DNA of 7,680 bases from NCBI GenBank assembly GCA_977017575.1, contig CDRNVI010000245.1, forward strand, positions 1-7,680, read 5' to 3'. A program made the translations under genes and the position numbers. The notes under the pieces are model-generated. The model did no database searches and was not told where the DNA came from. It was given only the letters and a program-made list of their open reading frames with translations. Shown here in pieces: positions 1 through 7,680 of the stretch; the first letter of the stretch is position 1; the number at the start of each line of letters is the position of its first letter. This DNA is from Paramoeba atlantica (lineage: Eukaryota > Protista > Discosea).

Positions 1-96
1 CTGTTAATTTTCCATCAACATCATAATTTTTATTTAAAAATTTTAATCAAAATCAATTTTATAAACATTTTTTGTAAAAAAATTAAAATTTTTACT

Positions 97-166
97 GGAA
101 AATTACGGTGAGATGCATAAAAATTAGATTTAAACATAAATTTATGCAAACTACCGTTTAATTTCC
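97..166. other. Imperfect hairpin (also at 4706-4775)
   Basis: tgcataaa 114-121 / tttatgca 141-148; acggt 105-109 / accgt 153-157; looser ggaaaatta / taatttcc at the base. Confidence 0.6.
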
Positions 167-512
167 AACAAAATTTAAATTTTTTTCATTCAAAAATAGA
201 TTTTTTTAATTTTTCGCCGACAAAATTGAAAAAAAATTGAATTTTCATTCAAAAAGTTGTAAAATTGAGTCTCAGGATGAAAAAGTGGAAAAAGACCACA
301 TTTTATCAATTCGACGCTAAATTAGCAAAAAATTTCAATTTCTACACCTAAATGACTGTAGAAATTGGTGTTTTCCTACAATTTTGTGGAAACTCCTGAC
401 AAACACTGCTAAATTTCCAACAAAAAGTCAATTTGCAGGTGCTGCCCGTGGATTTTCCAACAAAATACTAGCAAAACTACTCAAAATGCTATTTTTCCGG
501 CAGAAAACCGTC

Positions 513-656
513 AAAATCTGCTTTTTCTGGGCAGGAATGACAAAAACGGCCCAAAAAAGGCCCTGTCATTTTGCCCAAAAACGCAGTATTTTTTCCTGTT
601 CTGGCCTGCAAATTAGCGGATGTCCAAGTGCCCCAAAAAAAGTGACTTGGACTCCG
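513..656 (+). other. Two GC-richer hairpins with C-A(n) loops (also at 5122-5265)
   Basis: 513-592: aaaat-ctgc/gcag-t-atttt, tgggcag/ttgccca (one G-U), aatgaca/tgtcatt, ggcc-CAAAAAA-ggcc. 617-656: cgga/tccg plus gtccaagt/acttggac. Confidence 0.65.
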
Positions 657-804
657 AGCCGACTCGAAAAGTCGTATTTTCCGGCAGAAACGAAAAAATA
701 TGCCACATTTTGTCCGACGATTATTTACAACTTTTTCTCGCATCCCATCATAGCGATTTTGCGGATCTGCAAGTTGGGAGGGAACCAACTGCATTTTTTG
801 GCCG

Positions 805-957
805 TTTTGAACCCGTTTTGTAAAAAATCGCATATATAAACTCCATAATTTCCCCTCAGAAATCTGCCACTTTTGGACGCCAAAAAGTGTTTTGCAGAAT
901 CTCGAGGGCAAAATAGGAGTTTTTTGACCCGATTTTGTGAACAAAACTGGCATCAAA
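805..957 (+). other. ~150-nt rod-like hairpin (also at 5414-5566)
   Basis: Nested stems: ttttga/tcaaaa, gttttgt 815-821/acaaaac 940-946, aaaatcg/cgatttt, aaactcc 838-844/ggagttt 916-922, ccctc/gaggg, tctgc/gcaga, cacttttgg 868-876/ccaaaaagtg 880-889. The loop is ACG in copy A and AGA in copy B. Confidence 0.75.
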
Positions 958-1092
958 AACTATTCCAAATGCTCCAATCCGAATTTCAGCTATTGAACAC
1001 TAAAAATGCTGAAAATCGCTATTTCGCACTGGAATTCCGCCAAAACTCCTTTTCAATGCGTATTTTGGGCGAGAAAATCGTGAATTTTATAA

Positions 1093-1372
1093 TTTTTAAA
1101 CTTTTTTTTGTATAATTTATCATTTTTAGCGCGGATTTGTATAATTTCTCGCATAATTTATTAGTTTTATAGCGTTGTAGTTAAAATTTTCATAATTTTA
1201 TCATCAAAGTCATCATTTTTCTATAATTTCAAACAAAATTATTAAAAAAAATGTTGTCTCAGACGAAAAAATTGCATGAAAGTTGTTAAACAACACTAAA
1301 ACTAAAAAAATATCCCGCAGAAATTAAAAAACCGTGATAAAAATTTATAAATTCAAAAGAAAAATTTAAAAA
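1093..1372 (+). other. ~280-nt imperfect rod-like hairpin (also at 5702-5981)
   Basis: T-rich arm against A-rich arm in colinear nested order: tttttaaa/tttaaaaa, tttatca/tgataaa, gcggat/atcccgc, ttagtttt/aaaactaa, gttgt/acaac, tttcat/atgaaa, cattttt/aaaaatg, ataattt/aaattat around loop caaaca (1230-1235). Confidence 0.65.
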
Positions 1373-1392
1373 TCTTAAAAATTTATGATGAA

Positions 1393-1421
1393 ATCATCTT
1401 CTTTGTACCAAAATCAGATGT
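1393..1421 (-). repeat. Partial reverse copy (R') of the ~85-nt module (also 6002-6030)
   Basis: atcatcttctttgtaccaaaatcagatgt is identical to the core of the reverse module at 6431-6459. It is enclosed by tgatg 1386-1390 / catca 1425-1429. Confidence 0.85.
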
Positions 1422-1562
1422 AAACATCAAAAAATTTTTTTAAAATCACTAGTTGAAACCATCGTCTATGGTTTCTTTTGTTAATGATCAATGTTTTCAT
1501 TTCATTCATAACATTTTCACGTTAACTTCGTTCAACTAACTTGAATTTTATTAAAATTATGA

Positions 1563-1619
1563 TTCATAAAATAATTTTTTCATTGCTAAAAATAAAACCG
1601 CAATGGAAATTATTATGAA
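1563..1619 (+). other. Hairpin (also 6172-6228)
   Basis: ttttcattgc 1577-1586 / gcaatggaaa 1600-1609 (one U-G), extended by aataa/ttatt and ttcat/atgaa. The two inter-copy substitutions (1595, 1598) both lie in the loop. Confidence 0.7.
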
Positions 1620-1633
1620 ACAAGTTTTAATAA

Positions 1634-1659
1634 TTCAAACTTAAGTTTGAACTCGAGTT
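1634..1659. other. Overlapping perfect palindromes (18 bp + 10 bp), also 6243-6268
   Basis: ttcaaacttaagtttgaa 1634-1651 and aactcgagtt 1650-1659 are each their own reverse complement. Confidence 0.9.
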
Positions 1660-1806
1660 ATAAAATTTTAATAACATTAATATATACTTTTAAATAACTT
1701 CTATAATTAATTCAAAAGAGAATTTATAATTAAGAACTTATAAAACTATATTTAATGATTTAAAACTTAATAACTTGTTGTAATGTTTTCAATATAATAA
1801 TATATT

Positions 1807-1877
1807 TACGATATATTATCTTCTTTGTTCCAAAATCAGATGTTGATTATCGTACATTCTTATTACATGAAAACATA
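1807..1877 (-). repeat. Reverse-orientation copy (R) of the ~85-nt module
   Basis: 1831-1877 is the reverse complement of 2039-2085 (47 nt, 2 mismatches). 1833-1876 is the perfect reverse complement of 2395-2438 (44 nt). Confidence 0.95.
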
Positions 1878-2040
1878 ACAACATAAAGAATACAATAGGC
1901 ACTCCTTACATTTAAATGCCCTTAATATAATTTATCGATATATTTAATTACACAAATAATTTAAAATATAATTTATAAAATATTAATAAAGTTCATGTAA
2001 AATGTAAGAAGTTACCCTAGTTTTCCTGGTATTGTGAGTA

Positions 2041-2125
2041 TGTTTTCATGTAATAAACATGTACGATAATCAACATCTGATTTTGACTCAAAGCAGAGTA
2101 ATCATCGTTAAATATCGTTACAAAG
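2041..2125 (+). repeat. Forward module F1 (aaacatg variant)
   Basis: gttttcatgtaataaacatgtacgataatcaacatctgattttgactcaaagcagagtaatcatcgttaaatatcgttacaaag; near-identical copies at 2395, 6655 and 7021. Confidence 0.95.
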
Positions 2126-2394
2126 TTATTACAAATAAAACATAAATCACTAATAACAGGAAAATATTAAATACAAAAATATTTAATAAACTTCGATGCA
2201 AAAAAGCATCTTGACAATCTCTGTGTTTTTGTTAAAAAAAATAGCGTAAAACTACAAAACCATATATATAAAATGAAAAGTGTATAAAAAAGAAAAGCAT
2301 ACACTTTGATACATTCAATCGAAAAATATCTCAATCATGTATCATTAATTTTAGTATATATGGTAGGAGTTTTACCTTTACAGTGCTATTAGTC

Positions 2395-2480
2395 ATGTTT
2401 TCATGTAATAAGAATGTACGATAATCAACATCTGATTTGCACTCAAAGTAGAGTAATCATCGTTAAATATCAGTACAAAG
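2395..2480 (+). repeat. Forward module F2 (aagaatg variant)
   Basis: Direct repeat of 2041-2125, about 355 nt downstream. Confidence 0.95.
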
Positions 2481-2517
2481 TCATTACAAGAAAACTAAAG
2501 ATTAAAGCACTGTAAAA

Positions 2518-2552
2518 TTGCACTAAGATTTCCTTCAGAAATTCAAGTGCAA
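2518..2552 (+). other. TAAGATTT..AAATTCAA hairpin family, member H1
   Basis: ttgcact-aa-gatttc-cttca-gaaatt-ca-agtgcaa. Confidence 0.9.
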
Positions 2553-2629
2553 ATATCCGCCCAACTTATAAAATATAAGTGGCGTCTATATATATTTTTT
2601 TATCGAAAAAAACGATAAATAAATAAAGA

Positions 2630-2662
2630 TCATGATAAGATTTCTACGAAATTCAATCATGA
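2630..2662 (+). other. TAAGATTT..AAATTCAA hairpin family, member H2
   Basis: tcatgat-aa-gatttc-tac-gaaatt-ca-atcatga. Confidence 0.9.
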
Positions 2663-2663
2663 A

Positions 2664-2683
2664 GCATACACTATAGTGTATGC
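2664..2683. other. Perfect 20-bp palindrome (also 7322-7341)
   Basis: gcatacactatagtgtatgc equals its own reverse complement. Confidence 0.95.
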
Positions 2684-2827
2684 AAATTATTACAAAAATA
2701 ATAATTTTAAAATTTTTTCTTCGAAATTCAAAGAAGAATTTATTCGAAAAAAATATAAATTTTAATGTTTTCGTGTTTAACTACAACTTAAATTTATATA
2801 TATTTCGTTAAATTAAGAGAATAATTA

Positions 2828-3100
2828 AACGAAACTGTTACTCGGCAAAAATAAGGGAATTTTTGAGTAACAGACCGTTCAAATTGAAAACAAAAAAACA
2901 ATTTGCACGGCAATTCTTGGGGTTTTTACGCCTCACGGCTTCGTGATTGGACTAAAGAGCAGGAGCGAGAGCAAGAAAGTTTGCAGGGGTAGTTGAGTTA
3001 GCTATTCCCGGTGGAAGCTAACCTCGATTCTTTAGTCTTTAGTTGTGGTAATTTGGGATAGTGAAGTAAAATTTTTAAAGTTCACTATCGACAATTACTA
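2828..3100 (+). ncRNA. Putative structured RNA domain of unknown family (GC-richer, multi-hairpin); partial second copy 7486-7680
   Basis: ctgttactc 2835-2843/gagtaacag 2865-2873; tcacg-gctt-cgtga 2933-2946; ggactaaagag 2949-2959/ttctttagtct 3028-3038 enclosing gcaa/ttgc and gttagct 2997-3003/agctaac 3016-3022; gatagtgaa 3057-3065/ttcactatc 3081-3089. No family motif recognised; that it is an RNA is inference. Confidence 0.35.
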
Positions 3101-3640
3101 TTCTCTTTCATCTTTTGGCGTGCATTGCTAATTGATCCCAATAGACAATCACATTCAGAAATGATCGTTGCTATCCCTATATGTATGTAAAATATCATAC
3201 ATAAGAATCAATAAGATCTATTTCGTCTCCTCTTTCATCCTTTTAACATAGCAAGACTAATCTATATTATATAATTATTATTCAACTTTTTTAATTATAT
3301 TTTATCTGCTTGAACACCATAGTTCGATAAAAAATAAATAAAAAGATGAATAAATAACTAAAAAATAAAGATAGACAAGAACAAGAATAGTTTAGTTTAA
3401 TTCCGTGTTAAATCCTCAATCCTTAAGTCGGATTTGTCACTCCATATACGATCAAACTTTATTTACTTAAATTTTTACAAAGATAGTAAAATTAAAAGTA
3501 TAAAGATGATCTAGCTCACCAGTTTTATTTAAATTAAAATCTTACACAATGATTTTATATTTATAAACTACTCGCTTCCATCGACCCTCGACTTTGTTGA
3601 AGTTTAAGTTTTTGAGTTTACGATATTAAAGAGAAAAAAA

Positions 3641-3786
3641 ATATTATTGCGCTCTATTGGTGGGGCTTTCGTTAAATTATTAAAAGCTCAACGTCATTGT
3701 TCGCGTTTTACGTTACACTCCACAAGCTAAACAAGTGCGTTCTGCCTTAATAATCACTACCCCTCACCAAAAGGTCGCAATAATAT
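3641..3786 (+). other. 146-nt rod-like hairpin
   Basis: atattattgcg 3641-3651/cgcaataatat 3776-3786; ttggtgggg 3657-3665/cctcaccaa 3762-3770 (one G-U); attattaa 3676-3683/ttaataat 3747-3754; ttgtt 3697-3701/aacaa 3730-3734. Confidence 0.75.
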
Positions 3787-3790
3787 ATGT

Positions 3791-3894
3791 TTTTAGCGTT
3801 TAAGATCTGGAGACCATTTTCAAAATAGAAAATGTCAATCGCTTTTTTCTTACGCAAGTACGTCAAAAAAATCGTTTTTCTCCATGAGCTAAAA
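3791..3894 (+). other. Branched hairpin domain including a C-GCAA-G loop
   Basis: ttttagc/gctaaaa, tggaga 3808-3813/tctcca 3879-3884, cattttc 3815-3821/gaaaatg 3828-3834, tac-GCAA-gta 3851-3860. Confidence 0.55.
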
Positions 3895-4157
3895 CGAGTT
3901 AGTTCGATCGGGCTTTTTTTGATGCTTTTTTTGGATCGCAGCTTCAACAAAAAAAAATTTCCGCTGCTGTTTTCCAACAAAGAAAATTATAAAAAAATAA
4001 TTTTGTTGTTGTCAAATACGATCTTTTAAAATATAAAATTTTTTTTATCGTTATAAATTTTATTCCGACATAAATTTGTTGGAAAAGTAACAGTAAAAAG
4101 TTGTTAATGAAAAAAAAATAAATTCATTAACAACAACGTTGATGAAAAATAACAATC

Positions 4158-4625
4158 AACGCTGTTAAATTTCCAACAAAATAATGTCAGAAAAAAATTT
4201 CTGCCGAAATAATTTAGCTGATTAAATTTTTATCACGACAAAAATATTTTTTTGTTGATCAATTAAATCGTTATTAACAAAAAAGTTATAACGCTGTTAA
4301 TTTTCCAACATAAAAATTTTTTATCTCTCAAAAAATATTTTTTGATGTTCAAAGTTATCGTTTGATAACAAAAAAGTTATAACGCTGTAACTTTTCCAAC
4401 AAAAAAAATTTTTTTTCGTGTTAAAAATTATTTTTGATCAATAAAAATTATTTTCGATGTTCAAATTCATCGTTTGATAACAAAAAAGTTATAACGCTGT
4501 TAATTTTCCATCAAAAATTATTTTTTTTGCTTCAAAAATTTTTTTTAACATAAAAATTTATAATGATGATTACAAAATAAGTGTTGCAACTCAAAAAAGT
4601 TGTTTAACACTGTGAATTTTCCATC
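4158..4625 (+). repeat. Degenerate minisatellite, ~90-130-nt period, core aacgctgttaattttccaac
   Basis: Core at 4158, 4290, 4381, 4493 and 4606 (spacings 132, 91, 112, 113). tttgataacaaaaaagttataacgctgt occurs at 4361 and 4473. Outlying cores at 402/5011 and ~3962; a reversed core at ~4076-4093. Confidence 0.85.
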
Positions 4626-6420
4626 AACATCATAATTTTTATTTAAAAATTTTAATCAAAATCAATTTTATAAACATTTTTTGTAAAAAAATTAAAATTT
4701 TTACTGGAAAATTACGGTGAGATGCATAAAAATTAGATTTAAACATAAATTTATGCAAACTACCGTTTAATTTCCAACAAAATTTAAATTTTTTTCATTC
4801 AAAAATAGATTTTTTTAATTTTTCGCTGACAAAATTGAAAAAAAATTGAATTTTCATTCAAAAAGTTGTAAAATTGAGTCTCAGGATGAAAAAGTGGAAA
4901 AAGACCACATTTTATCAATTCGACGCTAAATTAGCAAAAAATTTCAATTTCTACACCTAAATGACTGTAGAAATTGGTGTTTTCCTACAATTTTGTGGAA
5001 ATCCCTGACAAACACTGCTAAATTTCCAACAAAAAGTCAATTTGCAGGTGCTGCCCGTGGATTTTCCAACAAAATACTAGCAAAACTACTCAAAATGCTA
5101 TTTTTCCGGCAGAAAACCGTCAAAATCTGCTTTTTCTGGGCAGGAATGACAAAAACGGCCCAAAAAAGGCCCTGTCATTTTGCCCAAAAACGCAGTATTT
5201 TTTCCTGTTCTGGCCTGCAAATTAGCGGATGTCCAAGTGCCCCAAAAAAAGTGACTTGCACTCCGAGCCGACTCGAAAAGTCGTATTTTCCGGCAGAAAC
5301 GAAAAAATATGCCACATTTTGTCCGACGATTATTTACAACTTTTTCTCGCATCCCATCATAGCGATTTTGCGGATCTGCAGGTTGGGAGGGAGCCAACTG
5401 CATTTTTTGGCCGTTTTGAACCCGTTTTGTAAAAAATCGCATATATAAACTCCTTAATTTCCCCTCAGAAATCTGCCACTTTTGGAGACCAAAAAGTGTT
5501 TTGCAGAATCTAAAGTGGAAAATAGGAGTTTTTTGACCCGATTTTGTGAACAAAACTGGCATCAAAAACTATTCCAAATGCTCCAATCCGAATTTCAGCT
5601 ATTGAACACTAAAAATGCTGAAAATCGCTATTTCGCACTGGAATTCCGCCAAAACTCCTTTTCAATGCGTATTTTGGGCGAGAAAACCGTCGATTTTATA
5701 ATTTTTAAACTTTTTTTTGTATAATTTATCATTTTTAGCGCGGATTTCTATAATTTCTCGCATAATTTATTAGTTTTATAGCGTTGTAGTTAAAATTTTC
5801 ATAATTTTATCATCAAAGTCATCATTTTTCTATAATTTCAAACAAAATTATTAAAAAAAATGTTGTCTCAGACGAAAAAATTGCATGAAAGTTGTTAAAC
5901 AACACTAAAACTAAAAAAATATCCCGCAGAAATTAAAAAACCGTGATAAAAATTTATAAATTCAAAAGAAAAATTTAAAAATCTTAAAAATTTATGATGA
6001 AATCATCTTCTTTGTACCAAAATCAGATGTAAACATCAAAAAATTTTTTTAAAATCACTAGTTGAAACCATCGTCTATGGTTTCTTTTGTTAATGATCAA
6101 TGTTTTCATTTCATTCATAACATTTTCACGTTAACTTCGTTCAACTAACTTGAATTTTATTAAAATTATGATTCATAAAATAATTTTTTCATTGCTAAAA
6201 ATAGAATCGCAATGGAAATTATTATGAAACAAGTTTTAATAATTCAAACTTAAGTTTGAACTCGAGTTATAAAATTTTATAAATTTAAATTATAATTTCA
6301 ATCATTTCTATAATTAATTCAATAGAGAATTTATAATTATGAAACTATGAAACTATATTTAATGATTTAAAATTTAATAATCCCTGTATGTGTTCTTTAT
6401 GTTTTCAATGTCTGATGATA

Positions 6421-6490
6421 TGTTCGATATATCATCTTCTTTGTACCAAAATCAGATGTTGATTATCGTACATTCTTATTACATGAAAAC
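6421..6490 (-). repeat. Reverse module R, copy B
   Basis: 6447-6490 is the perfect 44-nt reverse complement of 6655-6698. Confidence 0.95.
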
Positions 6491-6654
6491 AAAAAAGAAC
6501 ATACAACAGGGAAATACTAAGATACTTTAATAACTATTATGTATATAAATTGATCGAATATATAATTACAAAAATAATTTAAAATATTCAATAATATTAA
6601 ATATATATAGTTATTAAAGTGATCTTGTATCCTAGTTCATGTCGATTCTTTTAG

Positions 6655-6737
6655 GTTTTCATGTAATAAGAATGTACGATAATCAACATCTGATTTTGAC
6701 TCAAAGTAGAGTAATCATCGTTAAATATCAGTACAAA
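6655..6737 (+). repeat. Forward module, copy B first (aagaatg variant)
   Basis: Matches 2397-2479 apart from a few bases, and shares the aagaatg and tatcagtaca diagnostic bases. Confidence 0.95.
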
Positions 6738-6779
6738 ACTTATTACAAAGAAAACAACTAATAAAGCATCGACATGAAA

Positions 6780-6849
6780 TTCTGCTAAGATTTCTACGAA
6801 ATTCAAGCAGAAAATTACACTAAGATTTCCTATAGAAATTCAAGTGTAA
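6780..6849 (+). other. Tandem pair of TAAGATTT..AAATTCAA hairpins (H3 6780-6812, H4 6815-6849)
   Basis: ttctgct-aa-gatttc-tac-gaaatt-ca-agcagaa; ttacact-aa-gatttc-ctata-gaaatt-ca-agtgtaa. Confidence 0.9.
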
Positions 6850-7020
6850 ACAAACATTAGTATTGCAAAAACAATCTATGTTTGTATTAAAAAAAACACA
6901 TCTAGAACAATATAATATAAATCAATAAAAATATTTAATTACAAAAATAATATAAAATATAATTTATAAATTTATTATTAAAATGATCTAGATGAACATA
7001 TTCCTGGGTATTCTAATGTG

Positions 7021-7103
7021 GTTTTCATGTAATAAACATGTACGATAATCAACATCTGATTTTGACTCAAAGTAGAGTAATCATCGTTAAATATCGTATA
7101 AAG
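7021..7103 (+). repeat. Forward module, copy B second (aaacatg variant)
   Basis: Matches 2042-2125 apart from a few bases, and shares the aaacatg and tatcgt diagnostic bases. Confidence 0.95.
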
Positions 7104-7142
7104 TTTATTAATAATAAAACCACAAAGGAATCCAAGGAATAA

Positions 7143-7212
7143 TTATGCTAAGATTTATACTAAATTCAAGCATAAGATTGCACTAAGATTTCCTTCAGAA
7201 ATTCAAGTGCAA
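7143..7212 (+). other. Tandem pair of TAAGATTT..AAATTCAA hairpins (H5 7143-7175, H6 7178-7212)
   Basis: ttatgct-aa-gattta-tac-taaatt-ca-agcataa; ttgcact-aa-gatttc-cttca-gaaatt-ca-agtgcaa. Confidence 0.9.
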
Positions 7213-7285
7213 ATATCCGCTCAACTTATAAAATATAAGTGGCGTCTATATATTTAATCATTACAAAAATAATGAATTAAATAGA

Positions 7286-7320
7286 TCATGATAAGATTTT
7301 TTACAAAAATTCAATCATGA
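7286..7320 (+). other. TAAGATTT..AAATTCAA hairpin H7
   Basis: tcatgat-aa-gattttt-tac-aaaaatt-ca-atcatga; positional homologue of H2 with a different but still paired inner stem. Confidence 0.9.
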
Positions 7321-7680
7321 AGCATACACTATAGTGTATGCAAATTATTACAAAAATAATAATTTTAAAATTTTTTCTTCGAAATTCAAAGAAGAATTTA
7401 TTCGAAAAAAATATAAATTTTAATGTTTACGTGTTTAACTACAACTTAAATTTATATATATTTCGTTAAATTAAGAGAATAATTAAACGAAACTGTTACT
7501 CGGCAAAAATAAGGGAATTTTTGAGTAACAGACCGTTCAAATTGAAAACAAAAAAACAATTTGCACGGCAATTCTTGGGGTTTTTACGCCTCACGGCTTC
7601 GTGATTGGACTAAAGAGCAGGAGCGAGAGCAAGAAAGTTTGCAGGGGTAGTTGAGTTAGCTATTCCCGGTGGTAGCTAAC

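What the first reader, a model, noticed from the sequence alone, without database searches (positions are those of the whole stretch)
2518..2662. Repeated hairpin family N6-T-AA-GATTT-loop-AAATT-CA-A-N6 with complete compensatory change
Seen: seven copies at 2518, 2630, 6780, 6815, 7143, 7178 and 7286. Five different outer stems (ttgcac/gtgcaa, tcatga/tcatga, ttctgc/gcagaa, ttacac/gtgtaa, ttatgc/gcataa) are all perfectly paired. The inner closing pair varies C-G, A-T, T-A. The 2x2 AA/CA internal loop, flanking T-A pair and G-T pair are invariant. Loops are TAC, CTTCA or CTATA. Copy number differs (2 in unit A, 5 in unit B), often as head-to-tail pairs 2 nt apart. Established: invariant non-canonical internal loops inside freely co-varying stems are the typical signature of protein-binding or cleavage-site hairpins. 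Inference: a multivalent binding motif for an unknown protein. This is the strongest single signal in the window.
Basis: partly seen in the sequence, partly recalled or inferred. Interest (0 to 1): 0.9.

Follow-up and report, generated by a model that had tools for sequence, protein, structure and literature searches.

The report
Covarying mini-hairpins in a non-coding repeat
A real family of 33-35-base hairpin repeats, with a fixed mismatched core and freely changing but always paired outer stems, sits inside a non-coding, hairpin-packed 4.6-kb tandem repeat of a euglenozoan; the core looks like a recognition site, but nothing yet shows who binds it or whether it acts as RNA or DNA.

Summary
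There are seven exact copies of TAAGATTT-loop-AAATTCAA, all on the + strand (0.01 expected). Each has exactly six further Watson-Crick flank pairs; of 121 chance matches elsewhere, one had six. Six stem positions show double changes, none is broken, and 18 core positions never change. Paralogues differ at 0/36 core and 12/46 other positions (P=0.0008).

The copies are fewer than they look. They represent five lineages, all in one 4.6-kb tandem repeat. A 28-kb public contig of the same repeat (units A,A,B,B,A,A) adds 18 copies but no new stem.

The setting weakens the covariation argument. The repeat is non-coding, and its variable part is an unbroken chain of hairpins of 35, about 140 and about 300 bases. 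The long ones have unalignable yet self-complementary arms and almost no G-U pairs, so DNA-level inverted copying is at work.

Best reading (0.45): a structure-specific recognition hairpin whose core is under selection, acting in the repeat's own maintenance, rearrangement or transcript processing.

Main rival (0.25): a palindromic sub-repeat with no partner.

I found no Rfam family, no relatives elsewhere and no RNA evidence.

The scan noted this family before on other pieces of the genome (s1-370002, s1-377417). A follow-up on the same repeat (s1-369750) judged it hairpin-forming sub-repeats.

The parts
2518..2552 (+). Mini-hairpin, outer stem ttgcac/gtgcaa, loop CTTCA (unit A). Same position as 7178 in unit B.
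   Evidence: 62.9 bits
2630..2662 (+). Mini-hairpin, outer stem tcatga/tcatga, loop TAC (unit A). The 100%-identical constant flank begins at 2649, at the first base of the hairpin's 3' conserved half (AAATTCAA).
   Evidence: D1 starts at 2649; 57.2 bits
6780..6812 (+). Mini-hairpin, outer stem ttctgc/gcagaa, loop TAC. First of a head-to-tail pair.
   Evidence: (39.9 bits)
6815..6849 (+). Mini-hairpin, outer stem ttacac/gtgtaa, loop CTATA. Second of the pair, 2 nt after the first.
   Evidence: (61.1 bits)
7143..7175 (+). Mini-hairpin, outer stem ttatgc/gcataa, closing pair A-T, loop TAC. Paralogue of 6780 with compensated changes.
   Evidence: D10; 38.7 bits
7178..7212 (+). Mini-hairpin, outer stem ttgcac/gtgcaa, loop CTTCA. 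Paralogue of 6815 and the same position as 2518.
   Evidence: D6, D10; 62.4 bits
7286..7320 (+). Mini-hairpin, outer stem tcatga/tcatga, 7-bp inner stem, loop TAC. Same position as 2630.
   Evidence: 59.9 bits
2717..2738 (+). Possible decayed relative: a 6-bp stem ttcttc/gaagaa enclosing only the right half-core GAAATTCAA. It lies in the constant region and recurs at 7375-7396.
   Evidence: 18.4 bits, E 0.015; AAATTCAA at 2724 and 7382
2377..2517 (+). F hairpin of unit A, second copy (~140 nt): near-invariant ~82-nt core with a variable basal stem. Its 3' arm (2496-2517) runs right up to mini-hairpin 2518.
   Evidence: 2506-2516 is antisense to 2377-2387
6636..6779 (+). F hairpin of unit B, first copy, with its own variable basal stem. 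It abuts mini-hairpin 6780.
   Evidence: 6768-6778 is antisense to 6636-6646
7010..7142 (+). F hairpin of unit B, second copy. It is followed by the pair 7143/7178.
1805..2111 (.). Long ~300-nt near-perfect hairpin made of R, a variable hairpin and F (unit A). The unit B counterpart is 6435-6710.
   Evidence: I3, I4; z -11.2; z -15.3
1..4609 (.). One unit of the non-coding 4.6-kb tandem repeat that carries all copies. Unit B starts at 4610.

Best explanation
The seven elements are one family of short hairpin-forming inverted repeats. They are building blocks of the variable 'cassette' part of a non-coding, AT-rich 4.6-kb tandem repeat in a euglenozoan genome.

The fold is a 7-bp outer stem (fixed T-A at both ends, five free pairs between), then a fixed 2x2 A.A/A.C internal loop, then a fixed G.T(U) pair plus four A/T pairs, then a variable closing pair and a 3-5-nt loop.

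I read the fixed core as a sequence-specific docking surface that is presented only when the strand is folded. The folded form could be extruded or replicating single-stranded DNA, or a transcript of the repeat. The outer stem would be needed only to hold the fold. Its sequence drifts, and neighbouring copies differ so that each hairpin folds on its own.

With 2-5 copies per unit, placed at the base of the large F hairpins and at the border between cassette and constant region, the most likely role is in the repeat's own upkeep. That could be marking module borders for replication or recombination of the cassette, or for end-processing of its transcript.

Shown: the family, the fold, the constraint on the core, and the non-coding, palindrome-rich setting. 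Inferred: that a protein reads it, which strand or molecule is read, and the role.
For: Family and fold:
- 7 exact copies against 0.01 expected.
- 7 of 7 have exactly six Watson-Crick flank pairs, against 1 of 121 in chance matches.
- The predicted fold is the minimum-free-energy fold, alone and in context.
- Covariation: 6 pairs with double changes, 0 one-sided, 0 broken, 0 of 500 shuffles as high.

Constraint on the core:
- No change in 18 core columns, against at least 12 changes in 10 outer-stem columns and at least 4 in the closing pair.
- Between the paralogous pairs, 0/36 core against 12/46 non-core differences, Fisher P = 0.0008.
- The two 8-nt halves are too short for homology-driven conversion to keep them identical while the adjacent 5 bp differ (inference).
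- In a region where symmetry is otherwise restored everywhere, the asymmetric AAG/TCA part persists in all five lineages.

Folded rather than duplex recognition: loop length varies from 3 to 5 nt.

Position:
- Copies abut the bases of F hairpins.
- The constant flank starts at the 3' conserved half of copy 2630 (D1).
- A variant unit in run X3 joins the F base (6755) to 3 nt before copy 2518 through 20 new bases.
- The 2501-2700 stretch is the most structured 200-nt window on the + strand, z -9.6.
Against: - There is no evidence of transcription. The only RNA-labelled run of the organism laid nothing, although it is small and the tool warns this is no proof.
- No binder is known.
- All copies lie in one repeat family with five lineages, so the sample is small and related.
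- The two strands fold almost equally well, differing by 0.4-1.3 kcal/mol, so neither the strand nor RNA versus DNA can be told.
- Self-complementarity in excess of shuffles is found along the whole unit on both strands. The long hairpins show wholesale arm replacement with almost no G-U. So a DNA-level process that makes perfect stems operates here and could account for the 'compensation' without selection on pairing (PMC8794818).
- No relatives were found in other organisms, so there is no cross-species test.
Confidence: 0.45

Rival explanations
1. The hairpins are a by-product of palindrome-prone satellite DNA. They are just one class of sub-repeat in a dyad-symmetric tandem repeat. Their stems are kept perfect by replication template switching or hairpin-templated repair, not by selection. 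The core is uniform because the copies are young descendants of one unit. Nothing binds them specifically.
For: - Every module class in the cassette is a hairpin with a fixed apex and a changing, always paired base.
- Long-hairpin arms cannot be aligned between copies, yet each is complementary to its own partner, with 2 G-U among about 115 pairs.
- Excess local folding occurs on both strands along the whole unit.
- The mini-hairpin outer stems show no G-U intermediates at all.
- Template switching can create stems and multibase 'compensatory' changes in one event (PMC8794818).
- Units of one type are nearly identical, so the array is homogenised or young.
- An earlier follow-up on the same repeat reached this reading (s1-369750; a lead, not support).
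Against: - It does not explain why the asymmetric AAG/TCA loop and the G.T pair survive in all five lineages while the 5 bp next to them have turned over several times.
- The basal arms that flank the F core in the same sub-repeat have diverged beyond alignment, which argues the duplication is not very young.
- Symmetrising processes should sooner or later erase the mismatches.
Confidence: 0.25
2. The hairpins are a cis-signal of a mobile element. The single or double hairpin would be the recognition structure of a retrotransposon reverse transcriptase (a 3' stem-loop shared by a LINE and its non-coding partners), or of a recombinase or transposase of this genome. The sub-repeats would be remnants or tandem copies of such elements.
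For: - Hairpins occur as head-to-tail doublets.
- A conserved internal loop with covarying stems is what structure-reading enzymes of mobile elements use (established knowledge for stringent LINE/SINE pairs, R2 and IS200/IS605-type elements).
- First-stage notes report a 'covarying two-hairpin 3' signal' shared by an RLE retrotransposon and non-coding elements, and hairpins at recombinase elements, elsewhere in this genome (s1-377382, s1-369807; unchecked leads).
- An A8 run follows the first doublet region at about 6889-6896.
Against: - The window has no reverse transcriptase, recombinase or transposase, and its ORFs are noise.
- No target-site duplications or repeated tails flank the copies.
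- Copies differ in their stems, unlike fresh copies of one master element.
- All copies sit in fixed positions of the sub-repeat.
- I could not read the other pieces of the genome to compare motifs.
Confidence: 0.12
3. The hairpins are processing or boundary signals of a small-RNA or guide-RNA cassette array. The variable duplexes of the large hairpins would yield diverse small RNAs (hpRNA or siRNA-like, or kinetoplastid guide-RNA-like cassettes bounded by inverted repeats), and the mini-hairpins would mark 3' ends or recruit the processing machinery.
For: - The layout is constant scaffold plus variable duplex.
- Inverted R/F modules flank 146-161-nt variable segments. From memory, this recalls the inverted repeats around guide-RNA genes of Trypanosoma brucei minicircles.
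- In X3, the window's own cassette stretches are laid 2 to 10 times less deeply than the constant part, and their depth differs between runs, as with minicircle classes.
- The genome is called euglenozoan by another follow-up (s1-369886).
Against: - There is no match to the universal minicircle sequence GGGGTTGGTGTA, even with 3 mismatches.
- The apparent 21-24-nt 'linkers' are simply the 3' arms of the F basal stems, not free guides.
- The mini-hairpin stem (13 bp) is too short for Dicer-type processing.
- No T-run follows the hairpins.
- No RNA evidence exists.
- There are no Rfam small-RNA hits.
- The earlier follow-up found nothing for a programmable small-RNA system (s1-369750).
Confidence: 0.08

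Closest known systems
Repetitive hairpin-forming elements and double-hairpin elements of mitochondrial DNA in fungi, sponges and other eukaryotes (PMC2800124)
   Same: Both are short repeated hairpins, sometimes doublets, in non-coding AT-rich DNA. Their function is unknown, and RNA processing or recombination has been discussed.
   Different: Those are dispersed, apparently mobile copies with the same sequence, located in mitochondrial intergenic regions and even inside genes. Here the copies are confined to fixed places in one tandem repeat, the stems differ with full compensation, only the core is fixed, and an organellar location is not shown.
Bacterial REP/BIME elements read by RAYT (HUH) transposases
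   Same: Both are imperfect palindromes of 20-40 nt with conserved mismatches. They often occur in pairs and are recognised as folded single strands (established knowledge).
   Different: There is no conserved GTAG-type tetranucleotide 5' of the hairpin, no transposase in reach, and the host is a eukaryote. The metagenome matches to the core are single chance hits without paired flanks.
Integron attC sites
   Same: In both, structure rather than stem sequence is conserved, fixed unpaired bases sit in a variable stem, and the sites lie at borders of exchangeable cassettes. Here the cassette/constant border falls inside copy 2630.
   Different: attC sites have conserved R/L boxes at the base and a variable centre, whereas here the centre is fixed and the base varies. 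There is no integrase, the host is not bacterial, and recombination at the hairpins is not shown.
Stems made and maintained by replication template switching (PMC8794818)
   Same: Both show perfect Watson-Crick stems, multibase 'compensatory' changes without G-U intermediates, and arms replaced wholesale.
   Different: Template switching is a mutational mechanism, not a function. It does not by itself explain the invariant asymmetric internal loop.
Guide-RNA gene cassettes flanked by inverted repeats on kinetoplastid minicircles, and the repeat-rich maxicircle divergent region (PMC7169413, PMC9679448)
   Same: Shared features are a euglenozoan host, AT-rich head-to-tail repeats with many inverted repeats, copy-number and content differences between strains, and variable segments between inverted modules.
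   Different: There is no CSB3/universal minicircle sequence, no coding-region flank, the variable segments are themselves palindromes, and mitochondrial location and guide function are untested.

Membership tests
Any Rfam 15 family | Covariance-model score at or above the family's gathering score | tested here: not met
   Whole window at E<=1: only three miRNA-model hits of 23-26 bits against gathering scores of 100-150, none at the hairpins. Region 6630-7420 at E<=10: the best hits score 18-21 bits against gathering scores of 45-140.
Bacterial REP/BIME (RAYT-associated) | Conserved tetranucleotide (GTAG type) 5' of an imperfect palindrome | tested here: not met
   The 5' flanks are aaa, aga or taa followed by T. 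There is no conserved tetranucleotide beyond an A-rich context.
Bacterial REP/BIME (RAYT-associated) | A cognate HUH transposase gene in the genome | not testable with these tools
   Only the window and one 28-kb contig of the same repeat could be read. Neither has a credible gene.
Mitochondrial repetitive or double-hairpin elements | Dispersed, near-identical copies inserted at many unrelated sites of an organelle genome | tested here: not met
   All copies sit at fixed positions of one sub-repeat and their stems differ. Organellar location is unknown.
Integron attC-like folded recombination site | Conserved R''/L''-L'/R' boxes at the stem base with extrahelical bases | tested here: not met
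   The base of the stem is the variable part. The fixed unpaired bases lie in a central 2x2 loop.
Integron attC-like folded recombination site | Sites delimit exchangeable cassettes next to a tyrosine-recombinase gene | tested here: inconclusive
   The cassette/constant border lies inside copy 2630. A variant joint lies 3 nt before copy 2518. No recombinase is within reach, and the joints come from short contigs.
Kinetoplastid minicircle or guide-RNA cassette | Conserved sequence block 3, GGGGTTGGTGTA | tested here: not met
   0 matches with up to 3 mismatches.
Kinetoplastid minicircle or guide-RNA cassette | Variable segments complementary (with G:U) to edited mitochondrial mRNAs | not testable with these tools
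   No mitochondrial transcripts of this organism were available.
Retroelement 3' stem-loop read by its reverse transcriptase (LINE/SINE pair) | Motif at the 3' end of element copies, shared with an autonomous element, followed by a tail and target-site duplication | tested here: inconclusive
   No tails or duplications occur at the copies. The candidate partner elements noted elsewhere in the genome (s1-377382) could not be read.
pre-miRNA / hairpin-RNA precursor | Stem of about 20 bp or more giving a 21-24-nt duplex | tested here: not met
   The stem has 13 pairs interrupted by a 2x2 loop.
Intrinsic or Pol III-type terminator hairpin | Stem followed directly by a run of T | tested here: not met
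   The 3' flanks are atat, agca, aatt, acaa or gatt.
Kink-turn or loop-E type internal-loop motifs | Tandem sheared G.A pairs, or the AGUA/GAA core | tested here: not met
   The loop is AA opposite CA, flanked by U-A and G.U. The comparison rests on motif definitions recalled from established knowledge.

The most novel reading that the evidence does not exclude
The mini-hairpins are folded single-strand sites at which a structure-specific enzyme cuts, joins or primes. The hairpin modules of this high-copy euglenozoan repeat would then be exchanged as cassettes at hairpin bases and apices. That would be a eukaryotic counterpart of attC-type cassette shuffling, or the boundary signals of a so far undescribed guide or small-RNA cassette array.
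Probability: 0.1. Interest if true: 0.8.

Novelty: new variant of a known kind. Interest (0 to 1): 0.4.

Why it matters
If the fixed A.A/A.C loop really is read by a factor, this would be a compact, well-defined handle on an otherwise opaque class of DNA. That class is the large, hairpin-packed, rapidly rearranging non-coding repeats of euglenozoans, whose maintenance and possible expression are not understood.

The motif is small enough for direct pull-down and mutational tests.

The case is also a caution for covariation-based RNA discovery. In palindrome-prone DNA, perfect 'compensatory' change can come from the mutation process, so the informative signal is the conserved asymmetry, not the paired stems.

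Tried and rejected
- Known RNA family: Rfam on the whole window and on the hairpin region gave only noise.
- tRNA or tmRNA: none.
- Coding region: ORFs are short and overlapping. The 154-aa ORF of the constant region has relatives only in the same repeat. The two weak hits of the exhaustive search lie in unrelated loci, a CAP-Gly gene region and a small metagenome contig.
- Relatives elsewhere:
  - The 25-nt F core has no exact match in metagenome, prokaryotic genome or viral collections.
  - There is no similarity to plasmids or phages.
  - The longer strings appear in no paper, and papers holding only the 9-nt halves are unrelated.
I used them as a null for flank pairing.
- Kinetoplast minicircle: no CSB3. 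The organisation differs from Trypanoplasma borreli guide-RNA molecules. Diplonemid mitochondrial chromosomes share the constant-region-plus-cassette idea, but their cassettes hold gene pieces, which are not seen here. Perkinsela gave nothing comparable.
- Free 21-24-nt 'guide' linker between the F hairpin and the mini-hairpin: rejected, because the linkers pair with the sequence just upstream of F.
- Deciding the strand from thermodynamics: the difference is too small.
- C/D or H/ACA snoRNA, hammerhead, terminator: no boxes, core or T-runs on inspection, and no Rfam support.
- More copies: the 28-kb contig ERZ24900291:ctg3670c gave 18 copies but only the same five stems. One copy has a 1-nt deletion in the inner stem and still folds. 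Units of one type are almost identical, so they add no independent evidence.
- Organism: names of organisms and runs were coded, so the species could not be named.

Full report
**Observation.** The window is one and two-thirds units of a ~4.6-kb tandem repeat. Unit A is 1-4609 and unit B starts at 4610; their flanks are 99-100% identical. The core TAAGATTT-N3-9-AAATTCAA occurs seven times, always on the + strand, against 0.01 expected.

Each copy is flanked by exactly six further Watson-Crick pairs, and the next position is a mismatch. The hairpins therefore span 2518-2552, 2630-2662, 6780-6812, 6815-6849, 7143-7175, 7178-7212 and 7286-7320.

They do so alone and inside 260-410-nt contexts.

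As a null I used 121 chance matches to the same core in metagenome contigs. Of these, 72 have no paired flank base and one has six.

On the alignment of the seven, all 91 pair cells are standard pairs. Six pairs show changes on both sides, none on one side only, and none is broken. No shuffle of 500 reaches the observed covariation, and sliding the partners drops pairing to 24-52%. RNAalifold gives the same structure.

A covariance model of the seven finds just these seven (38.7-62.9 bits). It then drops to 18.4 bits for a stem ttcttc/gaagaa that encloses only the right half-core, at 2717-2738 and 7375-7396. This may be a decayed relative.

**How independent are the copies?** Copies 2518 and 7178, and 2630 and 7286, are the same positions in successive units. 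Copies 6780/6815 and 7143/7178 are paralogues through a 363-bp sub-repeat (D6 and D10). That leaves five lineages.

Translating the longest ORF of the constant region led to a 28,027-bp public contig, ENA ERZ24900291:ctg3670c. It consists only of this repeat, with units in the order A, A, B, B, A, A. It has 18 hairpin copies but the same five stems. One copy carries a 1-nt deletion in the inner stem. Units of one type differ by two substitutions and one 127-bp deletion. All the evidence therefore comes from one repeat family.

**Constraint.** Across the five lineages the 18 core columns show no change. These are the two terminal T-A pairs of the outer stem, the AA/CA loop, and the G.T pair plus four A/T pairs. 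The ten free outer-stem columns need at least 12 changes and the closing pair at least 4.

Between the two paralogous doublets there are 0/36 core differences against 12/46 elsewhere (Fisher P = 0.0008). In the same sub-repeat, the sequences flanking the F core have diverged beyond alignment.

The two 8-nt halves are too short for homology-driven conversion to keep them identical while their 5-bp neighbours differ (inference). The core therefore looks selected. The variable loop length argues for recognition of a folded form rather than of a duplex with fixed half-site spacing.

**Setting.**
- The repeat has no tRNA.
- It has no Rfam match.
- It has no credible ORF. The 154-aa ORF has relatives only inside the repeat, and the two weak hits of the exhaustive search are unrelated loci.
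- GC content is 0.18-0.45.

The variable part is a gapless chain of hairpins:
- The ~82-nt near-invariant F core folds into a ~100-nt hairpin. Its stem continues into variable arms. What looked like 21-24-nt linkers before the mini-hairpins are the 3' arms, pairing with the sequence just upstream of F.
- R (an inverted F), a variable hairpin and F together form ~300-nt near-perfect hairpins, z -11 and -15.
- After F come 8-9 abutting small hairpins.

In the long hairpins the arms of different copies cannot be aligned, yet each pairs with its own partner. Only 2 of about 115 pairs are G-U. Excess local folding is found along the whole unit and on both strands, strongest on the + strand at 2501-2700 (z -9.6).

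This is the signature of DNA-level inverted copying. Template switching in replication is known to create perfect stems and multibase 'compensatory' changes (PMC8794818). The paired stems are therefore weak evidence for selection here. The persistent asymmetry of the core is the stronger evidence.

**Reads.** Contigs of three DNA-holding runs and one RNA-labelled run were laid on 1700-7400.
- In run X3 the constant part has roughly 2 to 10 times the depth of the window's own cassette stretches.
- In X5 and X6, which carry other organism labels, most stretches of the window's cassettes are laid far less deeply than the constant part.
- Several cassette versions therefore exist, and their shares differ between samples.
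- One well-supported variant joins the base of an F hairpin (6755) through 20 new bases to 3 nt before copy 2518.
- Other joints start at 2630/2631, the first base of copy 2630, but their sides are short (21-25 nt) and may be graph artefacts.
- The 100%-identical constant flank begins at 2649, the first base of the 3' conserved half of copy 2630.
- The RNA-labelled run laid nothing. It is small, and the tool warns that this does not prove absence.

**What it is not.**
- No universal minicircle sequence is present, so it fails a defining feature of kinetoplast minicircles. The head-to-tail, inverted-repeat-rich, strain-variable architecture does resemble maxicircle divergent regions (PMC7169413), and another follow-up calls the genome euglenozoan (s1-369886).
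- It does not match the organisation of Trypanoplasma borreli guide-RNA molecules or diplonemid cassettes.
- It lacks the GTAG-type flank of REP elements, the basal boxes of attC sites, a T-run, and a stem long enough for Dicer-type processing.

**Mechanism.**
- Best reading (0.45): a structure-specific recognition hairpin. Its fixed A.A/A.C loop and G.T(U) pair are presented only in the folded single strand. Its outer stem merely has to pair, and differs between neighbours so that each hairpin folds on its own. The role would lie in the repeat's own maintenance, rearrangement or transcript processing. Shown are the family, the fold, the core constraint and the setting. Inferred are the binder, the molecule read and the role.
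- Rival (0.25): a partner-less palindromic sub-repeat maintained by template switching.
- Rival (0.12): a cis-signal of a mobile element, to be checked against the two-hairpin 3' signal noted elsewhere in this genome (s1-377382).
- Rival (0.08): boundary signals of a small-RNA or guide cassette array.

**Novelty and score.** The motif matches no described family and no sequence outside this repeat. The kind is familiar, however: short repeated hairpins in non-coding, palindrome-rich DNA with an unproven role, as in mitochondrial hairpin elements (PMC2800124), REP elements and attC sites.

It differs from them in combining a fixed asymmetric centre with a freely covarying base at fixed places of a eukaryotic tandem repeat. 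I rate it a new variant of a known kind, interest 0.4.

The scan had already noted the same family on other pieces of this genome (s1-370002, s1-377417). A follow-up on the same 4.6-kb repeat (s1-369750) called its large modules hairpin-forming sub-repeats. My tests agree with that for the large hairpins and add the core-constraint result for the small ones.

Noticed in passing
window 2039-2144, 2397-2495, 6655-6755, 7017-7124 (F); 1805-1878, 6435-6499 (R, inverted): The ~82-nt near-invariant F core folds into a ~100-nt hairpin, and its basal stem continues into variable, always paired arms. The minus strand folds better (-35.1 against -23.7 kcal/mol for one copy). Inverted copies (R) pair with F across a variable hairpin.
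   Followed up: partly
window 1805-2111 and 6435-6710: These are ~300-nt near-perfect hairpins (z -11 and -15). Their variable arms cannot be aligned between copies but pair with their own partners, with only 2 G-U among about 115 pairs. This is evidence for DNA-level inverted duplication.
   Followed up: partly
window 1947, 2689, 6565, 6938, 7260, 7347 (+ strand): A second hairpin family has the fixed apex ATTACAMAAATAAT: 6 copies against 0.13 expected. It caps both long and short hairpins that have different stems.
   Followed up: partly
window 1-20, 154, 406, 446, 4074 (-), 4162, 4294, 4385, 4497, 4610, 4763, 5015, 5055: A 20-nt motif close to CTGTTAATTTTCCAACAAAA occurs 13 times (0.01 expected), 12 of them on the + strand. 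Part of them lie in 112-nt sub-repeats at 4221-4535. It looks like an array of binding sites (iteron- or spacer-enhancer-like) in the constant region.
   Followed up: no
window 2664-2683 and 7322-7341: A perfect 20-nt palindrome, GCATACACTATAGTGTATGC, sits one base after mini-hairpins 2630 and 7286.
   Followed up: no
window 2567-2593 and 7227-7253: A hairpin with a 2-nt CA bulge follows mini-hairpins 2518 and 7178. Unit B has a C-to-T change that turns a C-G pair into a T.G pair. This is one of the few one-sided changes in the region.
   Followed up: no
window 1700-7400 (reads): In X3, the window's own cassette stretches are laid 2 to 10 times less deeply than the constant part, and the window's cassettes are rare in runs filed under other organism labels. 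A variant unit joins 6755 to 2515 through 20 new bases. More cassette versions therefore exist than the two in the window.
   Followed up: partly
L124 / L121 (ENA ERZ24900291:ctg3670c, 28,027 bp): This public contig is made only of the repeat, with units in the order A, A, B, B, A, A. One unit has a 127-bp deletion in the constant region (window 3808-3934). There is no unique flank, so the genomic location stays open.
   Followed up: yes
window 4001-4200: This is the strongest local folding signal of the constant region (z -8.8 on the + strand, -12.2 on the - strand). It lies around an inverted pair of the 20-nt motif at 4074-4093 (-) and 4162-4181 (+).
   Followed up: no
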